Of a stretch of 64,000 bases of DNA, positions 27,051 to 64,000 are shown in pieces; the first letter of the stretch is position 1; each line of letters starts with the position of its first letter. The position numbers and the translations under genes are program-made. The stretch is from Felis catus (lineage: Eukaryota): positions 7,874,001 to 7,938,000 of the forward strand of contig NC_058383.1 of assembly GCF_018350175.1 (NCBI RefSeq). The letters run 5' to 3'. The notes beneath the pieces are model-generated. The model was given only the letters and a program-made list of their open reading frames with translations, did not search any database and was not told the origin of the DNA.

Positions 27051-27162
27051 AAACGAAAAAGGGCTCAACTCTGGCATGGCGCCCCCAACATCTTCTCTCA
27101 TCCCACCGCACATCTTCCCACCGCACTCTGTGATTTTTGTGGGCCGTGACCCCCTGCTCCAG

Positions 27163-27234
27163 CTGCTTTCCCACGGAAACGACTGTTTCCCACGCCATCC
27201 GCTGGAGGGCGCTGGTCGGGAGGCTGAGGCCCTG

Positions 27235-27282
<48 letters not shown>

Positions 27283-27420
27283 GCGTTGAGCGTCTTCGTC
27301 GCGAGCTTCCAGAGAAGGGGCGGCCAAGGCGAGAGCGCGCGGGGGGGGGGGGCGGCAAAGGGGTCCCAGACACGCGGCGGCCCGGCTCTGGCGACGCAGC
27401 GCCCAGACCCGGGTCCTCCC
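27163..27420 (+). pseudogene. Isolated MUC3-like transmembrane-exon relic (copy A)
   Basis: GTGACCCCCTGCTCCAG|CTGCTTTCCCACGGA matches the copy-B acceptor at 46444-46475; RWRALVG, poly-Leu, VALSVFV; shared intronic GCGGCAAAGGGGTCCC; frameshift, deletion, donor GC. Confidence 0.85.
27232..27279 (+). repeat. CTG trinucleotide repeat: CTGCTGTTG(CTG)13
   Basis: Counted directly; pure run 27241-27279. Confidence 0.97.
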
Positions 27421-33411: not shown

Positions 33412-33823
33412 CTGGTTCCACTCGTCTCAAAGCCGAGTATCAGCTTTTCACCTGCCATCATCCAAATCGGCGCCCCCTTCCCCACTCATCATGACTTCAG
33501 AGACAACTGTGGTCAGCACCTTGACTCCTACTACCTGACGCCATCCATGATAATTGCTACCACAATTCAGATTATGACACAGTGCAGGGGACGGTGAGCA
33601 CTTTGACCTAACCTCTCCAGCAAGCCTGACTCACTCGCGGGGAGAGAGGGAGTGACCTGCCCTTGGTCTTATTTTTACACTTTGTCCCTAAACATTGGCT
33701 TTTGGGGGGTGGTTCCAGCCTGTACTTTCCCGGATTCGTGTCTTCCCCCAGGTACCTGTGACAATGGTGGGACCTTGGAGAGAGGCCAGTGCCCCTCACT
33801 GTTTTCCCATGAACTGCACTTTA

Positions 33824-36632: not shown

Positions 36633-39600
36633 GCTTTGGTTGTAGGCTTTCAGTCCAAGTCGTGGTAAGGGCAGGATGGAGACAGGGAAGAGAAAGGGGC
36701 AGAGGGAGTGAGGGGAACAAGTTTTCACCTCTCTCTCCTGCAGCTGGGACTGAAAATAAGGAAAGGCTGTGAGAGTCAGCCCCAGACTCCAGAATCCAAG
36801 GTCTTGACCAAGTGTATTCCCCATCCAGTTTTGCTGCTTCTTGGGAGGGGGGTGGTGCTGGGGAGGGGAAAGGTAGGGTCCAAGGAACTGCTCTGAGTGG
36901 CCCAGGTAGGCTGGGGGTCGGGCTGCCAGCAGCTCTCCCCATCTGACACCTCCTGGGCTAGTCTTGTCTCCTTGATGTCTTCCCTTCCCACAGCAGTGAG
37001 GTCAGATACCTGGAGGAGGGGGAGAGAGGAGTGAGGTGGACGGTGCAGAGGTGAACCTGTGCTTGGCCCCCACGTCCAGCAGGGTAGCTAACCGTGCCTT
37101 TCAGTTCCTGCTGGGTGCTGCTCTGTGCGAAGGGCTGCTTCCCGTAGCTGCCCCCGGTTCTGGCTCCTGCTCTGCCGCTGCACCAGACCCATAAAGCTGC
37201 TCAGGCTCCTCGACTTCCTCAGGGTGCTCAGGACCTCCACGGGGGCCAGAGGTGAGGGGGGCGGGCGGGAAAAGGGCTGCAGCGACCCTCTGGATATTCC
37301 AGGGCAGAGGTGTGTGGGGGGAAGTGACTCTGAAGCCTAAGGGGAGGCTCAGGAGGGATTCCTCAGAGCTTTGTGTGCAGGGGGCACTGAGACGGGGGAG
37401 GAGGAAGAAAGCCGGGTCCAGCTGGTGCCGCTCTCCATCCAGGACCAGGCAGGTGGCAGGTGTATGCATCGGGAGGGTGGGCATAACCTCTTTCCGGAAG
37501 AGTGCTCTTCCCACTTTGATTTGGTTTCCTGAGCCCCACATCTCTTCTGTCCTTCCCCCTACCAGCCCCAGTGCTCCCTCCTCTCTGGACTCTTCCTTTA
37601 CTTCTGGTGGTGCTTTCTCCATGATAGCCTTGACTCTGCCCCTGGAGGCGTCTCCTCTCTCTGGAGACGTCTCTGCCTTTGATCTCTGTCCCCTCCTCCA
37701 GCTCTGTCCCTATCTCTCCCACCCCCCACCCAGCCCATGTTTCTGGGCACAGCTGTCATTGGCAGGGCTGGGTTGGGGAGGGATACTGATTGCTTCCAAA
37801 AGGTTGGGTGTGTACCATCCAGTGTGAGGTCCAGGGCCTTCTCTCTTCTATTCCTTAGGAACTCCACAATTCCTCTGTATTTCCCTTTCCTCTGTCTCCT
37901 GGGGTCTGCTCCTGAACCCCAGTCCTAGACCTTCCTAACCTAGGAGCCCACAGGCCATCCTCTCACTTACCTCTAAGGCTACCTCCTGGCTCTAGAAGCT
38001 CCAACCCAGGGATCTTCATAATCCTCACCCCCATCTCCCTGACACACCCAGCTAGGCTGAGAAATGAAACCCCAGCTCTCAGAACAAAGATGTATTGAGT
38101 CCAAGGTGAAGAAGAGGCTGATGCTGAGGAGGTCTGGGCACTTCCTGCTTGCAACCACTGTCGCTGCAGGAGTCTCCCCGCCACTCAGCCCCAGCATTAT
38201 GAGATCTCTGACCCTCACTCTTACCCCCTGTAAAATGGGGTTGATGATTATGGAGTGAGGGGTTTATGTTTGTAAACTAATTAACCCAGTGGTCAAAATA
38301 AAGTGGGTGATAGAAAATATGTCTGTTTTCGTTAACACTTACTGCAAAACCTTCAGATTTTTGGGACCCATGCCTATCTGTTCAAAGCTTCCTTCTCTGT
38401 CCAGTCTCTTGGCCTACTAGTGTGGTCCTCTCTCCCTGTCCTTCAATCTCAATAAAGTCTGAGCCTCAGTCTCTGGTTTTCCCTTTGCAGCTCTCCGTGC
38501 AGATATCCCCTCTCTGACCCAATGGCTCCTGTGTCTATGATGTGTTGCCACCCCCAGCCTGGGCTTGGCTGGGCTCCCTTGGAAGAGGAAAGTTAGCCCA
38601 GACAGCAGTGTGTCATAGGGAGAAGGACAGCGGAGAGCCAAAGGGCGGGACTATGGGCAGCAGGGGGTGGAAGAGGAAGGAACAGAGTAAGGGAAACATG
38701 CATGTGTGGGGAAAGGGGTGGGGTGGAAGGACCCTCAGCTGAACCTGCGTGTTCAGCACAGCCATCCCAGGGCTAGAAAGTTCCCACTCAGAAGAGGAGG
38801 GCAAGGGACCGAGGGCACCCTCTTCAGAACCTCAAAGGCCCTAGCCCCAAGCTGCCTCTGATGGAGGGACAAGCAATGGAACTTCCTACCTTCTGCGAAA
38901 CATATCTGGAAAATGGCATGGTAGTAAAAAGCTTACATGGTGTTTAGAGTAATGAAACAACCTGCAAACGAATCCCTCTGTTCTCTCGTCAATACAGGCA
39001 CTTTCCCCATGGACGCATCCACTTCCGCTGAGCTTCTCCTCGGAGCAGGAGTGGCTCACACCGCTCTCAGCAACTCCCCCACGCTCCAAAGGCACAGCAA
39101 GGTGGCCACTCACCGTCCCCAGCAGGGCCTCTCCAGCTGCCAACAGTAGGGAACGCACACTTAAAATTTCCACCACCTCCCCCTACTTTAAACCTATTTC
39201 TGAAGCAGTGCTCAAAACTACAGTCAAGACCAACACCTCAACCATCCCGATGTCCAAGTTTGTCATCAAGGCTGAAACCACTCCACCCACCCTCATTGTC
39301 TACACGAGCACCATAAAGTGTATCAATCCCACGAGCCTTATAATCACTGCCGCTTACCCTGCCACCACCTGCATGACCCCAACTACCACCAAGAGACTCA
39401 CCTCTGCCATGATCTCTCCTCCCATGACCATTACCACTCTGGGGAAGACTCTCACAGCCATGGCCCTACTCTCTTCCTCTGTCCCAACCACGCACACAAC
39501 CTTCCATATGCCCACATCCTCTACAACTGGTAACACAAACAGGATTAGCCTGACCACAGCAAGCATTCATACAACCAGGTCTCTTACCCCAATAATCGCT

Positions 39601-42600
39601 TCTACCTCTATTGCCCCTTCTCTAACTGCCACGAACATCTCGGCAACAGTAACTGATCACAACTCTTCACCCATCGCCAGTACCGTCTTGATTATGACCA
39701 ACACTTCACTTCCTAACACCACCGTTACATTTAAAACAGTGACTGCCACCACTCATGATCCCACATCAACAAGTGTATTAACAACCCCTACAACACAAAG
39801 TGTATATCTGCTTCCACTGAAGTGACTGCCACGCTAAGTACACCAACAACAATCGCTTTGAAAACAATGAGCTCCACGGAAATGAAGCTTACGTGACAGA
39901 AACTCCTTCAACTTCTCCAGGCATGTCATCAATCACCCCAACAAATACAACTGTTTCTGCTACATCTACCACCTCTGAAACCGCCCTGGAACCCATTACC
40001 ACCCACATGACATTCACAACCACAGAACCACACTTCTCCACTGCAGCCACTACACACATGGGGAAGACAACCATCACACCTCATGCCACACCCCCTGGAA
40101 AACCACACTTATTCCTACACAGGACATTTCCACAGCGTCTTTCATGACAGAAATTACTTCTCCTCCCACAATCGCATCATTAATTACTCCCAGGAATACA
40201 GTCAATTCTCTGACATCAACCTCTTCTACCCCAGTGACCGCCAATCCCTTGACATCAGCCACGAGTATGTGTCTGTCTTCTCCACCTGCCCCATACACAA
40301 AACCAGTCTCCAGTTGGATCGCAAACATTACCCCTATATCTACCTTGATTATTGCTCCCTATAACCCACACCATGTCCACCCCTACATCTCCCACTATTA
40401 CTGGCACCATAGCTGCAACTGAAATCACCACTCCTATCAACACTTCCACCATTGCCACCTTGAACACAGCCTCTTTGCCCATTTCCTCCACTCTAGAAAC
40501 TGCCTCCAATGCTACTACAATCTTGGTAACAACCACCACCCCTAAAATACCACACAGTCCTCCAGGAGTCACTTCTTCAAATATCTACTCTACAGGAAGC
40601 ACGACCACATCAGCAATAACCCCATCTCCCACCACTGGTACCCCGAGGCTAGCCGTCACCATAAACTCATCCTCTGTTAGTACAGGCATGCCTGCCTCAA
40701 CACTGACAACCATCACCCCCACATCCAGGGGTACCAATGGTTCATTCATTACCATTCCTGACCTCACCTCTACAAGCACTGTTTTCAAAATGTCCACAAT
40801 CCCCACATGTATCATCCCATCTCCCCCAGCCTCCCAAAATACAGACACAACATGCAGTGTCATCACAACCTCTTCCACAAGGCTTACTCTGGCGCCCATG
40901 CTCACCAGTACCCACAGCACTCCCCCTCCCACCCTTGCTACACACACTCCAGTTACATATGCAGGCTCATCTTCCACGTCTACCAGCAGCAATGGGACCA
41001 TTCGGACAGAGAGTACTACCTCAACTGCAACGAGCACAAATACATCACACACAAATGCTAAATCCACCCCGGCACCCACTACCACTGACACACACACAGC
41101 ATCCCCGACCACAGGACGACCCTCTTCTACTAGATTTACTACATACACAGGCAAGGTGACTGTCACACCCTCTCATGCCACATCCACCTGGAAAACCACA
41201 CTTACTCATACAGGGGATGTTTGGACACAGTCTCTCACCATGGAGATTACTTCTCCTCTTGCAACTGCATCATCAATCACTCCCATGAATATGGTCAATT
41301 CTCTGACATTTATCACCTCTACTCCAGTCACCACCAATACTGTGACATCAGCCATGAGTATGAGTCTATCTTCTCCACCTGCCCCAACCGCAGTCAGTCT
41401 CCTCTTTGACAACAAACGCTACCCCTGTATCCACCTTGATTACTACCTTCCCTAGTACCCATGCTGCATTCACCCCTACAGTCACCATGGCCACAACTGA
41501 AATCACCACTCCCACAAACACTTCTATCTCTGCTACCTCGAGCACAGCCACTTCACCCACTCTCTCTGCCCCAGAAACAGCCATAACTGTTACTAGAGTG
41601 TTGGTAACACCCACCCCCACAATGTCACACAGTACATCTTGTGTTTCTCCTACACTTTCTTTCCCTACTCTGAGTACATCTACAGACGCGCTGACTACTT
41701 CTTTCGGTACTATTTCCTTTTCAATACCCACAACAATAATGTCCTCTTCTCTATCCTCCGCCAGTGTAAATTCAATGCTCACGACCACCCCTAACTCTCT
41801 TCCTACATTCTCACCTCTCTCTGGTATGGAAAATACAGGGACTTCTGTCACTGCTTTCACTACTCTTTTTTCATCCGAAACTACAAGAACTTCTCCAACC
41901 ATGTCTTCTCTAAAAGACCTTTGCGACTGAAACAACCACCACTTGTTTTATTTCTTCTACTACCCCATGTCCAGAATCTATATCAGTTACGATAGTGCCT
42001 GCCTCTCCCACTACTTCATGTATGGAAATGGGTCCAAGTAGTGAAGTTACTTCGATGCCTAACATCCCAATGTCAGTGTTCACCTCTACTACTGAGATGG
42101 CTACCTCCCCTAGTTCCACCAGTATGACAACTGTGTTTCCTAGGCATACGGACACTTCTGCTCCCGTTCTGGAAACGCATCCTACCAACAGCATAATGGA
42201 TGCTCCTAGTTCTATCAGCATTGGGACTGTCCCCAATTACACGGTTTTGATAAGCACTCAAAGACCCACCAGTGGAAGCTGGATGAGCACCAATTCTGTA
42301 ACCGTCCCACATATGCCTGGCTTCATGAGCCTCCCACTGACCATGAAACCAAGCAGCAGGTTTCCAACTGCCATGGTGGCTTCAATCAAGTTGACTCACT
42401 CCACCCCACCCACCATCAAGATTCCAGAAGCACCGGTAGTCATCTCTCAGACTACCACCACCTTTATGTCACCCAGGGCAACTTCAACCACTACTCAGAT
42501 GACCACACAGTCTAGACCGACTACACCTCAGGTTGGACTTACTGCTTCCCTGTTCCGTCTTCTCTCTCCCCTAATAAATTTCTGTGTCACCAAGGGCAAA

Positions 42601-43065
42601 CCCTATCCTGAACTTCCCTTTCTTACTGTGTTGCCCAGGCACCTGTGACCATGGTGGCACCTGGATGCTAGGCCTATGCCACTGCCCTTTGGGGTTCTCT
42701 GGGGACCACTGTGAGCTCCAGGAGATCAGGTGCCAGAATGGAGGTAAATGGGATGGCCTCAAGTGCCACTTCCCTAGCATCTTCCATGGCTACTGTTGGA
42801 GTTTGTGGTGGAAGAGGTGGATCTGGGTGAGTTGTCAGAGCCCTGCCTTTTGCACTTTCTCCTGGGAGGTGCCACTGGCTCTCTCTGGGCCCAGCCCTGC
42901 GGTTACCTGTTAGTATTCATGCCATTTTGCCTAATTCTGCCATTCTTGCCTTCTCTCTCATGCTTCCCTCTACCTCATCTCATGCCCCTTTTTCACCCTC
43001 ACCTCCAGGAGGTGGTTGGACCACACTCCTTCCTGTGGTCTCCTCCCAGTCTGGGCTGCTCCGAG

Positions 43066-43833
43066 CTGTATTAATTTCTAATTGCCACTGTAACAAATTA
43101 TACAAACTTAGCGGCTGAGATAATGCAAATTTATTATCTTACAATTCTGTAGAGTAGGAGTCTAACGTGAGTCTTACTGGGCTAACATCAAGGTGTCGGC
43201 AGGGCTGTGTTCTTCTCTGAAGGCTTTAGGGGAGAATCCATTTCTTTGCCCTTTTCAGGTTCTGAAGCCTCTCACATTCCTGGTCTCAAGGCTCCCTCTC
43301 TCCATCTTCAAAGCCAGCAACATTTCATCTCTGTGTCTTTTTTTTTTTCAAAAAATATTTTTAAGTTTATTTATTTTTGACAGAGAGAGAGGCAGAGAAT
43401 GAGCAGGGGAGAGGCAGAGAGAGATGGAGACACAGACTCAGAAGCAGGATACAGGCTCTGAGTTGTCAGCACAGAGCCTGACGCGGGGCTCGAACTCACA
43501 AACTGCGAGATCATGACCTGAGCTGAAGTCAGATGTTGAACCAACTGAGCCACCCAGGCGCTCCATCTGTGTCTTTCTTCTGTAGTCACATTTTCTTGTG
43601 ACTGATTCTGACCTCCTGTCTTTCTCTTCCACTGTTAAGGACTCTTGTGATTATGTTGAGCCCACCCAATAATCCACGTTAATTTTCCCATTTTAGTCAG
43701 ATGATTAGCAATTTTAATCTACATACAATCTTGATTCCTCCTTGCCATGCAGCATAACATATCCAGAGGTTCTGGGGACTAAGACATAGGCATCTTTGGG
43801 AGCCGTCATTCTGCCTCCCACTGAGGCAGACAA
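43066..43833 (-). mobile_element. MLT1-type LTR split by a CAN-SINE (43336-43561)
   Basis: ACAAACTTAGCGGCTG...ATCAAGGTGTCGGCAGGGCTG...CATCTTCAAAGCCAGCAAC...CATCTTTGGGAGCCGTCATTCTGCC; CATC..TGTGTCTTT on both sides of the SINE. Confidence 0.8.
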
Positions 43834-45414
43834 GGGAGAGACCACAGGTCTGACTGCTGTGCCTCCTTACCTCTAACCTTTCCCTCACCTTGGCACAACT
43901 TATCCTAGAAGTCCTATCTCCTTTCCCCCTACCATTCATTCAGTCTTCAGGGAACATGGAGAGGAGTGATAGGATGAACCTCTGGATTGTGGTGGTGGCA
44001 ATGGTGGTGAAGTGACCAGAACAGGGCATATTGTGCGCAGACACTGTGGGTGCTGAAGGGGATATGGAGGTGTCTGTTGACCAGGAGATCTCCCCTGACC
44101 TCAATGACAACACTTCCAAGGCCTACGAGGATTTCAGCGACACCTTCTGGAATCAGGTGACGGGGAAGGGGAGGGAACTCAAGGGTCTTTCCTTGAAGTT
44201 GAGCTTGGGCATCTGGGTGCACTCAGGTCATGAGGTTCAGGTGCAAGTGGAAGTGCAAGGATCCTGGCATTTCGGATGCAGAAGATTTACCAAAATGTGC
44301 AAGGATTCAAGGATGTGGAGATCCTGTCCCTGAGGCAGGAGACCCTTTTGGGGCTATGGAGGTAGTGTTGGGTGGGGGAAGGAGAATGAAGGGTGGGGGA
44401 ATGGAGAAGCCATCCTTTCCTTTTGGAATCAATCAGATTTCAAAAAGAGAGAGGTGGAAGTAGGACATAGGGGAACTAATAACTCCATGGGGAATTTTTT
44501 GGATCATTTTCTGTAGTCATTTCTCTGTAGGAGAGATGCCACCTTCCTTTTGAAGCATGGTTGGAAAGACAGAGATTACATGGGACATGCAGGGAGGTGG
44601 CGCATAAAGGCTTATGGGAAGCCTGGTGTCTGGACAGTAGCTGGTTTCTCTCTGGCTGGCACCTGGCCTGCTGAGTGGTCAGCCCGAGTGAGGCAAAGTG
44701 CCCAGGAGGGCCTGGTTTGATAATGGCTTGATGCAAGGCAGGAGAATGTCAATCATTCCTTGTCTTGCCTTCCAGGCTGACCAAGTCAGGGATGCTGGTG
44801 GGTCCTGAAAATAATGTGTCTGGAATCCCAACTCATTGCCTCTGCCTTCCTCTCACACCAGCGCACTTGTGGTTGGTCCTGGAGGTGACCTTCTAAAGAC
44901 CTATGTGCCCCAGGCCTGGGCACCCTGTAAGACACCCAATCTTCTCGATCCCCTCAGGAATGGCAGCATTGTGGTGCCCTTTAGCCTCCAGCTGGAGAGT
45001 GAGTATGAGAAGGTGAAGACAGTCTTGAAGGAGGAGATCCAGAATGTCAGCCACAATGGGGACAGCTGCCGGAGTGACTAGAGTAAGCCAAGACCGGAGG
45101 GAGGGGTTGGGGCAGAGCCACCAGCTTGGAGAGGAGCCTCTGGGCTCCGGTGCCAGCCCTGGGGTAGGCCTACAGCCAACTGGGCCAAGGATGGGGTTAA
45201 GGAGGGGCTAGTCCGAACCTGGGTGCTGGGGAAGACTCCTTGAAAGTTCTGCTCCAAGTTTTCAGGATGGCTGAGGATGCTTGCTTATTCGGGGGAGATG
45301 AGAGAGGCAAGAGTCACCTTCCCTTGCAGCCCCTCCACATGTCCCCCACAGTGGCAGAGCCCTCTCTGCCCCTCCCCAGGCTTCCCTGCTCTGCTTCCCT
45401 GTCCCTGACCCTCT

Positions 45415-45427
45415 ATTTATTTTTTAA

Positions 45428-45496
<69 letters not shown>

Positions 45497-45642
45497 AGCA
45501 GGGGAGGCGCAGAAAGAGGGAGACTGGGAATCCCAAGCAGGCTCTGCACTGACAGTGCAGCTCAGTGTCATGAACTATGAGATCATGACCTGAGCCCAGT
45601 TCAAGAGTCCAAGGCTTAACTGACTGAGCCACCCAGGCGCCC
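45415..45642 (-). mobile_element. CAN-SINE carrying a compound microsatellite (TG)14(AG)15 at 45431-45488
   Basis: Counted directly; SINE motifs follow. Confidence 0.92.
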
Positions 45643-47574
45643 CTGTCCCTGACCCTTTAACCTCTCTCAATTCCACCTGTGCCTGTGTCCCCCCTAGCCC
45701 TGTGTTTTAGGCCTGACTCCATCAAGGTGACCAATGACACCAGGAAGGAGCTGACCCTGGAAGGTAAGGGTGGGCAAAGGGATGAGTGGCCCCCGGAGGT
45801 CGTGACTCTCCCACCGCGGACATCTGCCCATTGACATTCTTGGGGAGGAGGGAAGACCTTTCAGGAGGCAAGTGGTGTGGCCCCGGCAGGGCTGTCCTTC
45901 CTGGAGCTTATTAGCTTCTCACCTGAGGACCAGCAGGGAAGGTGAGGGTCTTAGGGGCCGACCCTCCCCTCATCTAATCTCAGGGTCCACTCCACCACAC
46001 CCCACCCTCGGAAACATAGTTTCTCCCATCTGTTTTCAGCGTGATTATAACCAGGCCCCTGAATAGAGTGGATGAGGTCCTTGTCTCTCTGCACCCCCCT
46101 CCCACCTCCAGCCATCTGTCGCCGCCCCACTGCCAAAGGCTATGAGGATTTCTTCTTCCCCTCGGTGGAGGAGAACCGGCTCCGCTGCGTCACCAAATGC
46201 ACGTCGGGCGTGGATGGCGCCATCGACTGTCACCAAGGCCAGCGCCTTGTGGAGAGGAGCGGTCCCGCTCGCCGGTGAGGCCCTGAGCACCCGCGGGAGC
46301 CCCGCCCACCGCCCGCCCGGCCCGCGGCCCCGCCCCCTCGCCCCCCACCCCGGGGGGGCCCCCCCCCCCGCCCACCTGCCGGCGCCCACGGAGTCCAAGT
46401 ATGTTAGCCGACCCGCCCAGATGGTGGTGAGGGTCTGTGACCTGTGACCCCTGCTCCAGCTGCTTCTCCACGGACACGCGCTGGTTTTCGGGCCCGCGCT
46501 GCGAGGTGGCTGTCGCCTGGAGGGCACTGGTCGGGGGCCTGACGGGGGCCGCGGCTCTGCGGCTGCTGGCGCTGAGCATCTTCGTTGCTCGCTACAGCAC
46601 AGCCGGCCGAGGCGGAGGCAGGGAGCGCGTTGGGGGTGGGCGTGAGGGCGGCAAAGGGGTCCCCCCGCTGGGGCGGTCCTGCTCTGCCAGCGCGTCGCCC
46701 CAACTCAGGTCCTGGGGCGGCGACGGACGTGCGATGAGGACACTGTGGGGACGTTTTCGGACTTGGGCTTGGAGGACGAGCGAACAGGTGAGTCCTGCCT
46801 CCCGGGGAGGGGGGCAGAGGCTTCCCCGGGCGCCACTGCGGGCCTGGGGAGGACCCAACTACCTCCCTTGCCCGAGGCAGACACGGACCTCCTGCCGGGA
46901 AGCTTGAGTAGCCACTTCCCTGGGCACCCCCCGAAGGAGGCGCGGGTCCCGCACGCGCCATCCCTACAGGGCAGGCACTGGGCACAGGAGCCCCCCTCCC
47001 AGGCCTTGCTTTCCCCACCCTTCCTTCCCTTCTCCTTTCCTGCCCTTCTCCTCTCTTTCCTCCTGTTCTCCCCCCACCCCCCGCCCGCCCTTTTCTCTCT
47101 CTCTAGTCAAGGATGAAAACTTCCAGGTGGCCTTGGAGGACGTGGACATCAATGCGAGCGCGAGGGCGCCAAGGGGGGATGGTGAGGAGCTCTCCCAGAT
47201 CCAGGTCCAGAAGCCCTCCCGCCAGCCACCAGGGCAGGGGCCGGGCTAGGACCAGGAGGCAGTGGCTTTCCAGCCAGTCTGAGCAGGGTGGCTCCCTGTT
47301 CCCACTCCCTCTTTCACACATATTCTGTGGCGGGTGCACATCCAGAGACCTGAGGTGGCCTCCTCCTTGCTGTGGGCCCTGCGCCTCCCCCTCCCCCCTC
47401 CCCTGCCCCCTACCCCCAACGGTAGGAAGGAACCATACACACCGCATCCGTTTTGAGAGATGGCCCGAGGACTCGTGCAGCGCCGTCTCCCGGTTACCTT
47501 GGGCAAGATCCGACCAGCCCCCGATCCTCATCCTTCTCCCAGCTTGGGTGAAACCCACCTGGAGACCCGGTTCA

Positions 47575-49597: not shown

Positions 49598-49661
49598 ATG
49601 CTGGTGATCTGGATCCTGACACTGGGTCTCTGGCTCTGGGCACCTGCCCCAGTGACACGGG
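49598..49661 (+). CDS. MUC12: Mucin-12-like exon 1 (signal peptide)
   Basis: MLVIWILTLGLWLWAPAPVTR+G, phase-1 donor G|GTGAGT; resembles recalled human MUC12 MLVIWILTLALRLCASVTTVTP; fits ACHE-MUC3-MUC12 synteny. Confidence 0.85.
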
Positions 49662-50729
49662 GTGAGTGAGACTGGGGCTGGCACTCCCTGGGGGGCCAAT
49701 GCATGCTGGCCTCAGGCAGGGTTCAGGTGGCTGGCTTCCTCCTTTTCCCTCACTCCCTTTGCAGGGGACGGGGCTGCCAAAGAGCTGGACCTGGGCTGTG
49801 ACCTCATCTTACCTTTGGGGGTGCTAAAGGGGTCACTCTGGAGACGTGTGGGTCCAGAGCAAGGGGCATGGCCTGTGTTGTGCAGTTGATGACCTATGCC
49901 AAGCCCTGACCCGGGGGCTGAAAGGGGGCTGGCCTCCCCCCGTCTCCCCTCTCCAGCCTTCCCCCTGCGGGGAACGGGGACTTTTTCTTCACTTGGATGG
50001 TGGCCTCTGCCTGCCTTCGTCCTGTGGCCTGCATCTGCCCAGGAGGCCGGGTCTTTCCAAAGAGGCACCGAACGGGCTGCCAGCCCTGGGGGAAGGAAGG
50101 ATCCAGCATTTAGCAGCTTCTCCCTTGCGTGGGGAGAGCTCAGGAGACCCTGGAAAACCCCTCTAGTTACAAATGGTTGGAGGGCTGGGGGGGAGACACA
50201 GGCTCTGGGTCCTTGTTGAGCCTGTCATGGCCATTTCTCTGGGAAGCAACTGGTTTCAAGCTAATTTCCCGTGGGGTCCCTCACCAGAGCAGACTTTCTG
50301 AGCCCCCACCCCAGAGACCAGGAAAAACCGGAGGGAAGGGGTGGGCAGGACAGATGCTGGGGTGAGGAGTGTGGGGGGGAGTGAGCCCAAGGCCCCAGGT
50401 AGAAGAGGGGGCTTTTGAGTTGAAGGCCCTGTAGGGTTGTGGGAAGGGGTGGCGAGTGGGCAGGGGGAGATGGGGAAGGGAGTCTTTGGTGCCCTGCAGG
50501 GCAATAGTGAGATAACCCACGCAGGGAGTTCTGAGACGTCCCCCTCACGAACACGGGCCCTTAGGCGCCACCATACCCTCAAGTACCTGCTTCTCCCCTG
50601 CCCGGACACCTTTGAGGCCCAGAAGCGCAGCCCTTGGGAGTTGCCAATGGGCAAGGATGAGAGGCTGCGAGTGTGAACTTTGTGGATTTCAGGACACCAA
50701 GAAAGTACATTAATGATAGCTATAGTAGC

Positions 50730-59000: not shown

Positions 59001-59675
59001 AGTGATAGAGTGGCTAGCCCTTGAGTAAGTGTGTCTGGAGAGAAAGGACAGGCAGTGGGTGAATTATCCACGACAATGTGCTTTAGCTCTCCTATTCTTC
59101 TTGGGTCTGTGAGAATTGTTAGGATAGAGTAGGGGGAGTCTCACATGTAAGAGATGGGGAAGAGATGTCAGACTAAGTATCAGCCAGATGACTTAAGGTG
59201 ACTATGTGGTTTGCAAATCACAGAATGCGAGGAGCAAAAGAATGTGCATGGGGCATTTGTGTGCGTACAACTGTCCTTTCAAATTGATGCCAGAGTGCCC
59301 AACTAAATAAACATGTCCCAGAGTGCTTAGGGGAGAATATGTAGGCAATTTTGGGCAGAATATACATATTTTTGGAGGGCAAACAGATTTGTCAAATCCA
59401 CACCCATACAACTACTAATGCAAGTCATAAATCACAATCAACATCCAGATCCTTATCTAGTGATACCTTTCCCTCTAGACAAACTAGTATATTCCAGAAA
59501 AGACAAAAGTTCTAGATCACCTTTGGTAAGGTGTCCAAATATATAGGTTCCCTGATACTTCTTATAAGTTGTCCTTCAGTATCATAGGTTGACCAGCTAT
59601 CTGGAACAGATTGTCACTAAGATCGATTAGTGACAATTGTGAACAGATTGTCACACTCCTGCTGCCTCAGCATAG

Positions 59676-62600
59676 ACAGATTTAGGCCTCACAGAAGGAT
59701 CTACTCTGCACACAGGTACCCCTGATTTGTCCAAGAGTGCAGTTATCTCAGACAGAACCGTTACTAAAGAGGATGGACTTTCTGCTTCCACATCAAGGAC
59801 CACTGAATCCTTTACTACAAAGGATGCTCATGTACAAACAACCACGTCCTTTGCGGGGGGGTCCACTTCCTACACCTCCCCATCAGAGCTATCCACGTCA
59901 ACATTTTTCACTAACACCTCCTACAGCACAGATAATGCAAGTCCTGCCTCTGAATCCCGCATCAGTGAGCTCTCTACCCTCACTGTGGGCACTGAACGAA
60001 CAGACCCAACTCTCACAGGTGACACAACCATCCACACCTCTGTGTCAGATTCGTCTGAGACCACAGTATCACCTGAGGTTTCTCATGCCACAGGCGCTGC
60101 GAGTTCTGTAACTCCATGGAGTCCTGGAGAGGCATCCATCAGCCCAGCTGTCTCAGGACCAACCGCCACTGGCGTCACCCAGATATCCACAGACCACAGC
60201 ACCATCTCTGATTCCTCTAAACCCACGGACTCATCTGTAACCACCTTTACCAGAGAATATGGAAGTCCTGAGCCCACCTCAAGTCCCAGTGATGCCTTTT
60301 CTACTTCCAGTAGTTTTGGCCAAACCACCATGTTCTTTCCAGTGGCTTCCACAGTCTCCTCGACCCTCTCTGATTCATCAAATCCTACATTTTCACCAGA
60401 CACCCCCCATACCACTGACAAGGAAAGTCCTTCATCCTCTCTAGGTCCAGGTCCATCACCCACCAGCACTCAGGTCTCTGGACAAACAGCCACGCCTTTC
60501 ACTAAAGAGACAACTGCCTACACACACATTTCAGATTTATCAACAACACCGACTTCTGGTGAAACGTCCTACACCCAGGATGATGAAGGGACCACGTCCC
60601 CTTCGAGTCCTGGCCTGCTGTCTTCCAACCCTGGGATTTCAGGACAGACAAACACAGGCCTGACCGAGGGGCCTTCTGTCTATACAGACACACCTAATGG
60701 GTCCAAACCTACCAGTACCTCGGACAGCACAGTTACCAAGGAGGATGGAAGTTCTGCTTCCACATCTGGGCCTGCTGAATCATTTACCACTTCTGGTGTT
60801 GATCCACACACAGGCACAACTTTACCTCCAAGATCCCCTCCTTACACCACCACCTCAGAGGTGTCTGCACCCACAGTTTCGACTCACTCTTCCTACAGCA
60901 CGGATGAGGCAAGTGCTACTTCTCAGTCAAGCTCTAGTGATTTATTTACCACCAGTGTGCTCTCTGAACAATCAGCCAGGACTCTCACAGAGAAGCCAAC
61001 TGTCCACACCATTTCTGATTCATCTGAATCAACAGCTTCTTCCTACAGCCTCAGAACCCCAGGCCTTGGCAGTTCTGCAGCACCCTCGAGTCCTGGAGAA
61101 TTCCCTTCCAGCCCAGTTGGCTCACGACTGACTGCATCTACAGTCACCCAGCCATCCACAGAGCACAGCACCGTGTCTGATTCTTCTCAACCTCCAGACT
61201 CATCGGCAACCACTTATACCAAGGATGATGAAAGTCGTGTGCCTACGTCAGGTCCCACTGAATCTTTAACCACCTCTCCTGGTTCTGGACCACCAGCCTC
61301 ACCCACAGCTATGGAGTCTACTTTCTCCACAAGCATCTCAGAGTCGTCAGAATACACAGTGTCTTCCTATAGTACAGATTCTTCAACTCCATCAGACCAT
61401 GAAGGATTTCCCACCGCTTCCCTGACCACTGGACACAGCGCTACAACTTTTACTGGATTGCCCTCTGTCTTTACAACTATGCCTGATTTGTCCAAAACAA
61501 CCATTTCTTCTGAAACCTTCTATACCAGGGATGATGGAAGTGCAATGTTCCCTTCCAGTACTGGTCAGATGTCTAGCACACTCTCTGCCTCAGTACAGAC
61601 AACCACAGGCCTCATGGACGGATCCAGTGTGGATACAGGTACCACCCACTCTTCAGAACCTATAGTTTTATCACACAGCACAATGAGCAAGGAAGATGGG
61701 CTTTCTGCTTCCACATCAAGAACGACTGAATCCTTTTCTACAAATGCTGATCACAGACAAACAACTACAATTTTTGCTGAGAGGTCTACTTTCTACACCT
61801 CCCCTTCAGAGTTGTCCACGTTAACAGTTTCCACTCACACCTCTTATAGCACACATAATTCAAGTCCTGCTTCCCTATCCAGCCCCATTGAGTTCTCTAC
61901 CCCCAGTGTAATCACTGAACCAACAGACCTAACTCTCACTGGTGAGACAGCTGTCCACACCACCGTGTTGGATTTATCTGAACCCACAGTATCAGCTAAG
62001 CTTTCACAAGCCACAAGTAGTTCTGTAGCTCCATGGAGTCCTGGAGAGGCATCCATCAGCCCAGCTGTCTCAGGACAAACCACCACTGGCGTCACCCAGA
62101 TATCCACAGACCACAGCACCATATCTAATTCCTCTAAACCCACAGACTCATCTGTAACCACCTTTACCAAAGACGATGGGAGTCCTGCATCGACCTCAAG
62201 TCATAGTTTTGGCCTAACCACCATGTCCTTTCCAGTGGCTTCCACAGCCTCCTTGACTGTCTCAGATTCACCAAATCCTTCATTTTCACCAGACACCTCC
62301 CATACCACTGACAAGGAAAGTCCTTCATCTCCTCTGGGTCCAGGTCCATCACCCACCAGCACTCAGATCTCTGGACAAACAGCGACGCCTTTCACTAAAG
62401 AGATAACTGTCTACACTCAAATTTCAGATTTATCAACACCATCGTCCTCTTCTGAAACATCCTACACCAGGAATGATGGAGGGACCATGTCTGCCTCATA
62501 TCCTGGCCAGCTGTATTCCACCTCTGGGATTTCAGGACAGACAAACACAGGCCTGACCGAGGGGCCTTCTGCCTATACAGACACACCTAATGGGTCCAAA

Positions 62601-64000
62601 CCTACCAGTACCTCGGACAGCACAGTTACCAAGGAGGATGGAAGTTCTGCTTCCACATCTGGGCCTGCTGAATCATTTACCACTTCTGGTGTTGATCCAC
62701 ACACAGGCACAACTTTACCTCCAAGATCCCCTCCTTACACCACCACCTCAGAGGTGTCTGCACCCACAGTTTCGACTCACTCTTCCTACAGCACGGATGA
62801 GGCAAGTGCTACTTCTCAGTCAAGCTCTAGTGATTTATTTACCACCAGTGTGCTCTCTGAACAATCAGCCAGGACTCTCACAGAGAAGCCAACTGTCCAC
62901 ACCATTTCTGATTCATCTGAATCAACAGCTTCTTCCTACAGCCTCAGAACCCCAGGCCTTGGCAGTTCTGCAGCACCCTCGAGTCCTGGAGAATTCCCTT
63001 CCAGCCCAGTTGGCTCACGACTGACTGCATCTACAGTCACCCAGCCACCCACAGAGCACAGCACCGTGTCTGATTCTTCTCAACTTCCGGACTCATCAGC
63101 AACCACTTATACCAAGGATGATGAAAGTCATGTGTCTACATCAGGTCCCACTGAATCTTTAACCACAGGGTCTTCCTATAGTACAGATTCTACAACTCCG
63201 TCAGACCATGAAGGATTTCCCACTGCTTCCCTGACCACTGGACACAGCGCTACAACTTTTACTGGATTGCCCTCTGTCTTTACAACTATGCCTGATTTGT
63301 CCAAAACAACCATTTCTTCTGAAACCTTCTATACCAGGGATGATGGAAGTGCAATGTCCCCTTCCAATTCTGGCCATCTGTCTAGCACCCTCTCTGCCTC
63401 AGCACACACAACCACAGGCCTCGTGAAAGGATCCAGCATGGTTAAAGGTACCACTCATTCATCAGAACCTACAGTTATCTCAGAAAGCACTGTTACCAAA
63501 GAGGATGGGCTTTCTGCTTCCACATCAAAAACCACTGAATCCTTTACTACAAAGGATGATCATGTACAAACAACCACATCCATTGCTCGGGGGTCCACTT
63601 TCTACCCCCCCTCAGAGCTGTCCACACCAACATTTTCAACAACTCACACCTCCTACAGCACAGATAATGCAAGTCCTGCCTCCGAATCCAGCATCAGTGA
63701 GCTCTCTACCCTCACTGTGGTCACTGAACGAACAGACCCAACTCTCACAGGTGACACAACCGTCCACACCTCTGTGTCAGATTCGTCTGAGACCACAGTA
63801 TCACCTGAGGTTTCTCATGCCACAGGTGCTGCGAGTTCTGTAGCTCCATGGAGTCCTGGAGAGGCATCCATCAGCCCAGCTGTCTCAGGACCAACCGCCA
63901 CTGGTGTCACCCAGATATCCACAGACCACAGCACCATCTCTGATTCCTCTAAACCCACGGACTCATCTGTAACCACCTTTACCAGAGAATATGGAAGTCC
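59676..64000 (+). CDS. MUC12: Mucin-12-like large PTS exon, open to the window edge (>1,440 codons)
   Basis: Translated by hand: no stop from 59676 to 64000 in the frame GLTEGSTLHTGTPDLSKSAV...; Ser/Thr/Pro-rich with ~28-aa periodicity. Absent from the ORF track, presumably because no stop is reached. Exact acceptor uncertain (59676/59680/59686). Confidence 0.88.
59685..64000 (+). repeat. Coding higher-order tandem repeat (units start 59685, 61608, 63417)
   Basis: GGCCTC..GGATC unit starts spaced 1923 and 1809 bp; 60680-61154 is identical to 62573-63047. Confidence 0.92.

What the first reader, a model, noticed from the sequence alone, without database searches (positions are those of the whole stretch)
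37191..47375. Complete MUC3A-type mucin gene disabled at nearly every exon: probable MUC3A loss in this felid
Seen in sequence: the start codon reads ATA; the PTS exon is broken into at least six frames; the EGF exon is 188 nt (1-nt deletion near 42797) and lacks a Cys; acceptors are CGG at 44273-44275 and 47331-47333; donor is GC at 44335; about 8 codons are missing right after the SEA cleavage motif GSIVV; in-frame TAG at 45079-45081; two EGF2 Cys are Arg (46243, 46270); an Arg sits in the TM helix; the TM donor is lost; the cytoplasmic exon is frameshifted; the stop reads TGG so the PDZ ligand is gone. Too many independent lesions to be assembly error. Inference: a major intestinal glycocalyx mucin was lost in an obligate carnivore while neighbouring MUC12 stayed open. 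I cannot tell if this is already reported.
Basis: partly seen in the sequence, partly recalled or inferred. Interest (0 to 1): 0.78.

Follow-up and report, generated by a model that had tools for sequence, protein, structure and literature searches.

The report
Dead MUC3A mucin gene in cats
The cat-family copy of MUC3A, a gene for one of the large sugar-coated proteins that line the gut surface, sits in its normal place but is broken in all 12 exons; other cat species share the damage, and gene models from dogs, seals, sea lions and the panda are damaged in other ways.

Summary

- **Lesions:** ATA in place of the start; a 3.5 kb PTS (Pro/Thr/Ser-rich) exon that changes frame at least 6 times; a 188-nt EGF1 exon with a frameshift and Cys>Phe; lost splice sites; a 24-nt deletion just after GSIVV; an in-frame TAG; two Cys>Arg in EGF2; a shortened TM helix containing Arg; a frameshifted tail; TGG in place of the stop.
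- **Identity:** the best matches of the EGF2 exon used as query are all mucin-3A/3B models.
- **Not an assembly error:** 14 DNA runs from 5 studies hold 97-98% of the sampled words. Models from three other felids (Lynx pardinus, Iriomote cat, one unnamed) share most lesions and add private ones.
- **Neighbour:** the gene downstream is MUC12.

Best reading: a fixed unitary pseudogene (a dead gene with no working copy left), older than the split of these felids.

The link to obligate carnivory is not supported. Sea lions share an EGF2 frameshift. True seals and the panda share a last-exon change that removes the PDZ ligand. Canid models lack a conserved Cys and are truncated.

The window's MUC12 has a TAG at 59673-59675, which counts only under some acceptor choices.

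No read-level or RNA evidence was obtained, and no orthologous DNA could be fetched. I found no published report.

The parts
37191..37251 (+). Exon 1 relic (signal peptide); ATA where the start codon should be; GT donor at 37252-37253
   Evidence: sequence. IKLLRLLDFLRVLRTSTGAR aligns with MQLLR(V/L)LL.. of the hippo P0113, capuchin P0149 and donkey P0107/P0136 models, Ile opposite Met.
38998..42531 (+). Exon 2 relic (PTS/mucin domain), 3.5 kb, in at least 7 frame segments; no tandem-repeat array
   Evidence: frame path f0>f1>f2>f1>f2>f0>f1; the panda N-terminus aligns at 39007-39606 and the end of its PTS at 41914-42525; no tandem repeats; one old 1.09 kb internal duplication. Human exon 2 is 8.8-15.9 kb and mouse 12.4 kb.
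42639..42826 (+). Exon 3 relic (first EGF-like region), 188 nt; 1-nt deletion near 42797; Cys>Phe (CHFPS)
   Evidence: Pfam gives weak EGF hits only. Shared with lynx P0001.
44041..44156 (+). Exon 4 (SEA part A), frame and splice sites intact
   Evidence: DTVGAEGDMEVSVDQEISPDLNDNTSKAYEDFSDTFWNQ.
44276..44334 (+). Exon 5 (SEA part B); preceded by CGG (44273-44275) instead of CAG; followed by a GC donor (44335-44336)
   Evidence: Felid models start this exon 6 nt later, at an internal AG.
44958..45082 (+). Exon 6 (SEA part C with the GSIVV autocleavage motif); 24-nt deletion right after GSIVV; in-frame TAG at 45079-45081
   Evidence: Every non-felid reference has D/VY(L/V)V(L/Q)L(E/K)(L/M/F) after GSIVV and Gln where the window has TAG. 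The deletion is shared by lynx, Iriomote cat and P0101.
45698..45763 (+). Exon 7 (linker LCFRPDSIKV..), intact
46112..46274 (+). Exon 8 (second EGF-like region); Cys>Arg at 46243-46245 and 46270-46272
   Evidence: This exon was the query of the representative search, whose best hits are all mucin-3A/3B models.
46460..46621 (+). Exon 9 (transmembrane segment); 4 residues shorter, Arg inside the helix; expected donor (46622-46623) reads GG
   Evidence: The lynx model reads on through this point.
46709..46787 (+). Exon 10 (cytoplasmic); about 13 nt missing, frame changes between SWGGDGR and DEDTVGTF
47107..47158 (+). Exon 11 (VKDENFQVALEDVDIN..); expected donor reads CG (inferred)
   Evidence: The boundary is inferred from the references..DTNVR|VHI..
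47334..47375 (+). Exon 12 (VHIQRPEVASSLLW); preceded by CGG (47331-47333); TGG (47373-47375) where orthologues stop, so there is no C-terminal PDZ ligand
   Evidence: The same ending is seen in lynx P0001.
49598..49664 (+). Context: MUC12 exon 1 (signal peptide MLVIWILTLGLWLWAPA..)
   Evidence: 70% identical to the start of pangolin mucin-12 P0189.
59647..63998 (+). Context: MUC12 PTS exon, open from 59676 to the window end (1441 codons); TAG at 59673-59675
   Evidence: best named hits are mucin-12-like Eumetopias and mucin-12 Manis; felid-type models run from this PTS into a MUC12-type EGF; roughly 950-bp repeat units; the TAG and the candidate acceptors.

Best explanation
This is the felid orthologue of MUC3A (MUC3), now a unitary pseudogene, meaning a dead gene with no working copy left.

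The gene keeps its ancestral place and its 12-exon layout: signal peptide, PTS exon, EGF, SEA, EGF, TM, tail. It cannot make a membrane mucin for several reasons:
- It has no start codon.
- The mucin domain cannot be read in one frame.
- The SEA domain has lost the strand that follows its autocleavage site.
- Three structural cysteines are gone.
- There is a premature stop.
- The membrane anchor and the tail are damaged.
- The C-terminal PDZ ligand is read through.

The lesions are fixed. Most arose before the window species, lynx and Prionailurus diverged, and each lineage then added private ones, as expected under neutral decay. Seven of ten point lesions are A/T to G/C changes in a 65% G+C stretch, which fits GC-biased drift on unconstrained DNA (inference).

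Shown: orthology, the lesions, their sharing among felids, and MUC12 next door. Inferred: that no protein is made, that other membrane mucins (MUC12, MUC17, MUC13) cover the function, and the rough age.
For: - **Synteny:** TRIP6, SRRT, UFSP1 and ACHE lie upstream (ACHE matches Pfam COesterase at 2e-115). MUC12 lies downstream. This matches the published order ACHE-MUC3-MUC12-MUC17 (PMC9578598).
- **Identity:** in an HMMER scan of 1.84 billion representatives with the EGF2 exon, the hits at E<=1e-10 (down to about 56% identity) that I checked for names are almost all mucin-3A/3B models (one is labelled mucin-17) or unnamed contig ORFs. Named MUC12-type proteins align at only 28-33%.
- **Lesions:** read directly and confirmed against intact orthologues.
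- **Exon count:** all 12 exons that the paper reports for MUC3A are recognisable.
- **Shared among felids:** Lynx pardinus VFV18695.1, Prionailurus iriomotensis GAB5582755.1 and an unnamed felid model all carry the 24-nt SEA deletion; the lynx model also shows the EGF1 frame break, CHFPS, PARR and ..SSLLW, and the unnamed model reads the tail of EGF1 in the shifted frame. They hop frames in the PTS exon and add private frameshifts. The lynx and Iriomote cat models get no SEA Pfam hit, whereas most orthologues do.
- **Independent DNA:** 14 runs from 5 studies hold 0.97-0.98 of 519 sampled words of 42500-47400. The dozen or so lesions in that stretch would cost more words than that if they were errors.
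- **No felid RefSeq protein:** among MUC3 models of 170-1347 aa, dozens of other mammals are represented but no felid RefSeq entry appears.
Against: - At conserved columns the window differs from the non-carnivore consensus at only 22/195 sites. That is inside the range of species with intact models (7-24%), so amino-acid divergence alone does not show long neutral evolution.
- Only this 64 kb window could be read, so an intact copy elsewhere in the genome is not excluded. Full-length models above 1347 aa were outside the reach of the protein searches.
- No read-level check succeeded, and no orthologous DNA could be fetched.
- Gut metatranscriptome contigs hold up to 84% of the 4.9 kb stretch. 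The locus may therefore still be transcribed, or those runs may carry host DNA.
Confidence: 0.85

Rival explanations
1. The 37-47 kb gene is a decayed duplicate, and the working MUC3 orthologue lies elsewhere in the felid genome.
For: The locus has a history of duplication. Older MUC3-like relics sit upstream: a TM-like exon at 27134-27348 and a PTS-end plus EGF1 relic at 33452-33813 (note s1-162526). Catarrhine primates carry two MUC3 genes. My protein searches could not see models longer than 1347 aa.
Against: This gene occupies the ancestral slot directly between ACHE and MUC12. Nothing else MUC3-like lies between 47.4 and 59.6 kb. An old felid model jumps from this gene's EGF2 straight into the MUC12 C-terminus. 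The only felid MUC3 proteins in the databases are patchworks of this same broken locus.
Confidence: 0.07
2. The lesions are assembly or sequencing errors in a repeat-rich, G+C-rich gene that is hard to assemble.
For: Mucin loci are often misassembled. Six N runs lie elsewhere in the window.
Against: No N run lies inside 37191-47375. Fourteen DNA runs from five studies hold 97-98% of the sampled words. Three other felid species show the same lesions in independent assemblies. The lesions include a 24-nt deletion, point changes and lost splice sites, not only homopolymer slips.
Confidence: 0.02
3. The locus still does something, for example as a non-coding RNA or as a short secreted fragment translated from an internal start.
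For: Gut and feline metatranscriptome contigs hold 7-84% of the stretch, necessarily including intron sequence. Exons 4, 7 and 8 keep good splice sites.
Against: There is no start codon and no intact signal peptide exon. No open frame joins more than two exons. The felid copies differ from one another by private frameshifts, which argues against constraint. The RNA runs may simply carry host DNA.
Confidence: 0.05

Closest known systems
MUC3A / MUC3 (membrane mucin of the 7q22-type MUC3-MUC12-MUC17 cluster)
   Same: Same position next to ACHE. Same 12-exon layout. Per-exon identity to intact MUC3 models runs from about 55% to 100% where the match is real. GSIVV motif, EGF-SEA-EGF-TM order and the VHIQRPE.. 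last exon are all present.
   Different: No start codon. A PTS exon of 3.5 kb with no tandem array and at least 6 frame changes, against 8.8-15.9 kb in human and 12.4 kb in mouse. SEA deletion, premature stop, lost cysteines, damaged TM and tail, no stop and no PDZ ligand.
Unitary pseudogenes from lineage-specific gene loss in Carnivora (from general knowledge, not tested here: TAS1R2 in cats)
   Same: A single-copy gene at its ancestral locus, with introns kept, many independent disabling mutations, and shared across related species.
   Different: The gene is a structural gut-surface mucin with close paralogues next door. No dietary rationale is evident, because caniform relatives with other diets also show damage.
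MUC12, the neighbouring paralogue in the same window
   Same: Same family and architecture, same strand, 2.2 kb downstream (exon 1 at 49598).
   Different: Its PTS exon is open for at least 1441 codons and keeps roughly 950-bp repeat units up to 97% alike. Its C-terminus is intact in a felid model.

Membership tests
MUC3-type SEA-domain membrane mucin (functional member) | Start codon and signal peptide exon | tested here: not met
   ATA sits opposite the Met of five orthologue models, and there is no in-frame ATG upstream in that open stretch.
MUC3-type SEA-domain membrane mucin (functional member) | One long PTS exon readable in a single frame | tested here: not met
   At least 7 frame segments, stops in all frames, and no tandem array.
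MUC3-type SEA-domain membrane mucin (functional member) | Complete SEA domain with the G|S(I/V)VV site and the following strand | tested here: not met
   GSIVV is kept, but the next 8 residues are deleted and a TAG ends the exon. No SEA Pfam hit was found for the exon pieces or for the felid models.
MUC3-type SEA-domain membrane mucin (functional member) | EGF-like regions with all conserved cysteines | tested here: not met
   Cys>Phe in EGF1 and two Cys>Arg in EGF2, plus the EGF1 frameshift.
MUC3-type SEA-domain membrane mucin (functional member) | Hydrophobic TM helix, cytoplasmic tail and class I PDZ ligand at the C-terminus | tested here: not met
   The TM segment is 4 residues shorter and contains Arg. 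Its donor is lost, the tail is frameshifted and the stop reads TGG. The PDZ motif is described in PMC9578598.
MUC3A orthologue (by descent) | Position between ACHE and MUC12, and best similarity to MUC3 rather than MUC12/MUC17 | tested here: met
   The cluster order comes from PMC9578598.
Unitary pseudogene | Multiple independent disabling mutations at the ancestral locus, with introns retained | tested here: met
   More than 15 lesions across 12 exons.
Unitary pseudogene | Lesions fixed and shared among related species | tested here: met
   Lynx, Iriomote cat and a third felid model share them. Fourteen DNA runs hold the sequence.
Unitary pseudogene | No functional copy elsewhere in the genome | tested here: inconclusive
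   None in the window and none among protein models of 170-1347 aa. The rest of the genome could not be searched.
Processed (retrotransposed) pseudogene | Intronless copy away from the parent locus | tested here: not met
   All introns are present and the locus is syntenic.

The most novel reading that the evidence does not exclude
MUC3A is failing across the whole order Carnivora, not only in cats. Felids have a fully decayed gene. Sea lions (Callorhinus, Eumetopias) share an EGF2 frameshift that removes the membrane anchor. Canids have lost a conserved SEA cysteine and yield only truncated models. True seals and the panda share a last-exon change that deletes the PDZ ligand.

If so, constraint was relaxed at or near the base of Carnivora, after the split from pangolins (whose MUC3A is reported intact), and the order builds its enterocyte glycocalyx without MUC3. 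The TAG at the start of this genome's MUC12 PTS exon raises the question of whether a second cluster member is also at risk here.
Probability: 0.4. Interest if true: 0.65.

Novelty: new member of a known kind. Interest (0 to 1): 0.5.

Why it matters
MUC3, MUC12 and MUC17 form the dense glycocalyx on enterocyte microvilli, which is the last barrier between gut bacteria and the epithelium. A natural, fixed knockout of MUC3 in cats, and perhaps in other carnivorans, matters for three reasons.

- It shows the cluster is partly redundant.
- It bears on the use of cats and dogs as models of intestinal disease and on reading their gut RNA-seq. Reads and gene models labelled MUC3A in felids come from a dead locus, and one old model fuses it to MUC12.
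- It provides a comparative system for asking what MUC3 does that MUC12 and MUC17 do not.

It is one more lineage-specific gene loss, not a new kind of biology.

Tried and rejected
- **Read laying:** There is therefore no read-level check of the lesions and no splicing or expression evidence. Local scripts run after that call that searched the window used a copy with those bases masked.
- **The look-up of encoding contigs:** All cross-species statements rest on protein models.
- **Pfam on single exon pieces:** only weak EGF hits. The pieces are too short to be informative about SEA.
- **Literature:** seven searches found no report of MUC3A loss in felids or carnivorans. Only general MUC3 cluster papers turned up.
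- **Out-of-frame PTS stretches as evidence of decay in seal and panda:** considered and rejected. The same artefact occurs in models of species with intact C-termini (sifaka, whale, desman).
- **Arg residues in the exon 1 peptide as decay:** considered and rejected, because hippo and donkey models have them too.
- **Joined spliced model:** none was built or searched. Every exon was searched or aligned on its own, by reference.
- **N runs:** left untouched.
- **Primate-like ORF P0011:** returned and possibly from human-derived contigs. I did not use it, compare it or search further with it.
- **My recollection of the human MUC3A C-terminus:** served only as an early lead. Every comparison in this report uses non-human sequences that the tools returned.
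Full report
**Setting.** The window carries TRIP6, SRRT, UFSP1 and ACHE, then a mucin at 37.2-47.4 kb (+), then a second mucin whose PTS frame is open from 59676 to the window end. ACHE at 18.3-21.6 kb on the minus strand matches Pfam COesterase at 2e-115. This is the published layout of the MUC3 cluster: ACHE at the 5' side, then MUC3, MUC12 and MUC17 (PMC9578598). No N run lies inside the finding.

**Checking the observation.** I read each exon with its three frames. I then aligned each exon on its own to intact, non-human MUC3 models that the searches returned: pig P0007, tenrec P0008, whale P0015, elephant seal P0099, panda P0005, horse, bat, dugong, alpaca and two lemuriform primates. All 12 exons that PMC9578598 reports for MUC3A are recognisable.

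- ATA at 37191-37193, opposite the Met of 'MQLL..' in hippo, capuchin and donkey models.
- A PTS exon (38998-42531) whose Ser/Thr/Pro-rich frame runs f0>f1>f2>f1>f2>f0>f1.
- A 188-nt EGF1 exon (42639-42826) that slips frame near 42797 and reads CHFPS where orthologues read CHCPS.
- CGG at 44273-44275 and GC at 44335-44336 flanking the 59-nt exon 5.
- Eight codons missing immediately after GSIVV.
- TAG at 45079-45081, where orthologues have Gln.
- CGC at 46243 and 46270, where all orthologues have Cys.
- A TM segment four residues shorter, with Arg in AAALRLLAL, and GG where its donor should be.
- A frame change in exon 10, with about 13 nt missing.
- CGG at 47331-47333 and TGG at 47373-47375, where orthologues stop after ..(S/T)SS(L/V).

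I add three more lesions. There is a frameshift near 39080. The end of exon 2 is out of phase with exon 3. The expected exon 11 donor reads CG.

Three softenings apply. A GC donor can be functional. An AG 6 nt inside exon 5 could substitute as the acceptor. Arg residues in the signal peptide also occur in the hippo and donkey models.

**What it is.** A scan of 1.84 billion representative proteins with the EGF2 exon alone (window:46111-46275) gave 21 hits at E<=1e-10. Those I looked up by name are almost all mucin-3A or mucin-3B models (one bat model is labelled mucin-17), or unnamed contig ORFs. The best was a Lynx pardinus 'intestinal mucin' at 91% identity. MUC12-type proteins align at only 28-33%.

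The downstream gene is MUC12:
- Its best named relatives are mucin-12-like (Steller sea lion, 56%) and mucin-12 (pangolin, 48%).
- Felid-type models run from this same PTS into a MUC12-type EGF.
- Its signal-peptide exon lies at 49598-49664.

So the gene in question is the MUC3A orthologue, both by position and by sequence.

**Not an artefact, and not one species.** Fourteen DNA runs from five studies hold 97-98% of 519 sampled 31-letter words of 42500-47400. About a dozen lesions lie in that stretch, and each would remove roughly three sampled words if the assembly were wrong. At most a few lesions could therefore be discordant (inference).

Three other felid models are patchworks of the same broken locus: Lynx pardinus VFV18695.1, Prionailurus iriomotensis GAB5582755.1 and an unnamed 1150-aa model, P0101. 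All three carry the 24-nt SEA deletion. The lynx model stops EGF1 at ..HGYCW, while P0101 reads its tail in the shifted frame. The lynx model also has CHFPS, PARR and the ..SSLLW read-through. All of them hop frames in the PTS exon.

Each also has private changes. The Iriomote cat has its own frameshift inside EGF2. The window alone has Cys>Arg at 46243, where the lynx model keeps Cys. P0101 jumps from this gene's EGF2 into an intact MUC12-type C-terminus, so it is a fusion of a dead gene with a live neighbour.

The lynx and Iriomote cat models get no SEA Pfam hit, while most orthologues do. No felid RefSeq protein appeared among MUC3 models of 170-1347 aa, although dozens of other mammals did.

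**How it works.** It does not work as a gene. There is no start codon and no single-frame mucin domain. The SEA fold has lost the strand after its cleavage site, and three cysteines are missing. A stop interrupts it. The anchor and tail are damaged, and there is no PDZ ligand.

Seven of ten point lesions are A/T to G/C changes in a stretch with 65% G+C, which fits GC-biased drift on unconstrained DNA (inference).

The PTS exon is 3.5 kb with no tandem array and only one old 1.09 kb duplication. Human exon 2 is 8.8-15.9 kb and mouse 12.4 kb. MUC12 next door keeps roughly 950-bp units up to 97% alike in an open frame.

**Age.** The lesions shared among the felid models predate their split. At conserved columns the window differs from the non-carnivore consensus at 22/195 sites. 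That is inside the range of species with intact models (7-24%) and similar to the elephant seal (18/195) and panda (25/192). Substitutions alone therefore do not show great age. The count of roughly a dozen indels is what points to several million years of neutrality (a rough inference).

**Beyond felids.** The carnivory story does not hold up, for the following reasons:

- Sea lions (Callorhinus, Eumetopias) share one EGF2 frameshift (..EENRL|PASPNALW..) that removes the rest of EGF2 and the anchor.
- True seals (two Mirounga species and Halichoerus) and the panda share an altered last exon (VHIQRPEVGL..PCPRQ) in place of the PDZ ligand.
- The grey seal reads LYFKPDS where other species read LCFKPDS.
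- Dog, dingo, wolf and jackal read DSSQ where others read DSCQ. The dog, dingo and wolf models end by reading into intron 6. The jackal model lacks exon 7 and is frameshifted after EGF2.

These are protein models, not DNA, so each needs checking. Even so, two of the changes are shared across independent assemblies. The pangolin MUC3A is reported intact.

I did not count out-of-frame PTS stretches in the seal and panda models, because models from species with intact C-termini show the same artefact.

**MUC12 caveat.** Exon 1 of MUC12 ends in phase 1. Three acceptors are phase-compatible, with the exon starting at 59647, 59671 or 59680. The first two put the TAG at 59673-59675 in frame. Another felid-type model reads Gln there, and pangolin and sea lion have Gln in the same repeat motif. 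The third acceptor skips the TAG. 'MUC12 stayed open' therefore holds for at least 1441 codons, but its 5' end needs RNA evidence.

**Limits.**
I worked beside those bases afterwards and sent none of them to any search tool.
- Gut and feline metatranscriptome contigs hold 7-84% of the 4.9 kb stretch, which includes introns. This could be unspliced RNA or host DNA, and I cannot tell which.
- Seven literature searches found no report of this loss.

**Verdict.** This is a real, fixed MUC3A pseudogene in the cat family. It is a new example of a known kind of event and of moderate interest. The more interesting open lead is that MUC3A may be failing across Carnivora as a whole.

Noticed in passing
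window 27134-27348 (+): A relic of a MUC3-type TM exon ([42 protein letters not shown]) lies 10 kb upstream of the gene. Its hydrophobic stretch and the residues after it are closer to the intact pig and panda sequence than the main copy's TM exon is. No neighbouring relic exons were found.
   Followed up: partly
window 33452-33547 and 33748-33813 (+): Relics of a PTS-exon end (SSKSAPPSPLIMTSETTVVSTLTPTT) and an EGF1 start (PGTCDNGGTLERGQCPSLFSHE). Together with the 27 kb relic they point to older, far more decayed MUC3 copies between ACHE and MUC3A.
   Followed up: partly
window 59673-59675 (+): A TAG lies inside MUC12 exon 2 under two of three phase-compatible acceptors (exon starting at 59647 or 59671). 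An acceptor that starts the exon at 59680 would bypass it. Another felid-type model (P0185) reads Gln here. This could be a recent nonsense allele, an acceptor shift or an error.
   Followed up: partly
window 49598-49664 (+): The MUC12 signal-peptide exon (MLVIWILTLGLWLWAPAPVTR, GT donor) lies only 2.2 kb after the last MUC3A relic exon and 10 kb before the MUC12 PTS exon.
   Followed up: partly
window 59662-63941 (+): The MUC12 PTS exon is built from roughly 950-bp units of two alternating types (spacing 867-972 bp). Some copies are 88-97% alike, and all are in one open frame.
   Followed up: partly
protein models P0180, P0198, P0199 (Callorhinus, Eumetopias): Both otariid species share the same frameshift inside the MUC3A EGF2 exon, so the models end without an anchor.
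   Followed up: partly
protein models P0005, P0099, P0100, P0200, P0201, P0202 (panda, Mirounga x2, Halichoerus): These models share an altered last exon, VHIQRPE(V/L)GL..PCPRQ, in place of the ..(S/T)SS(L/V) PDZ ligand. This suggests one old frameshift in the common ancestor of bears and seals.
   Followed up: partly
runs X15-X20, for window 42500-47400: Gut and feline metatranscriptome contigs hold 7-84% of the sampled words of a stretch that is about 80% intron. This could be unspliced pseudogene RNA from shed enterocytes or host DNA carry-over.
   Followed up: no
protein P0009 (unnamed contig ORF): An unidentified species has a MUC3 EGF2 exon with GQR in place of GQC and PLA in place of PTC. 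These are the same two cysteine positions lost in the window, but in a sequence only 72% identical to it.
   Followed up: no
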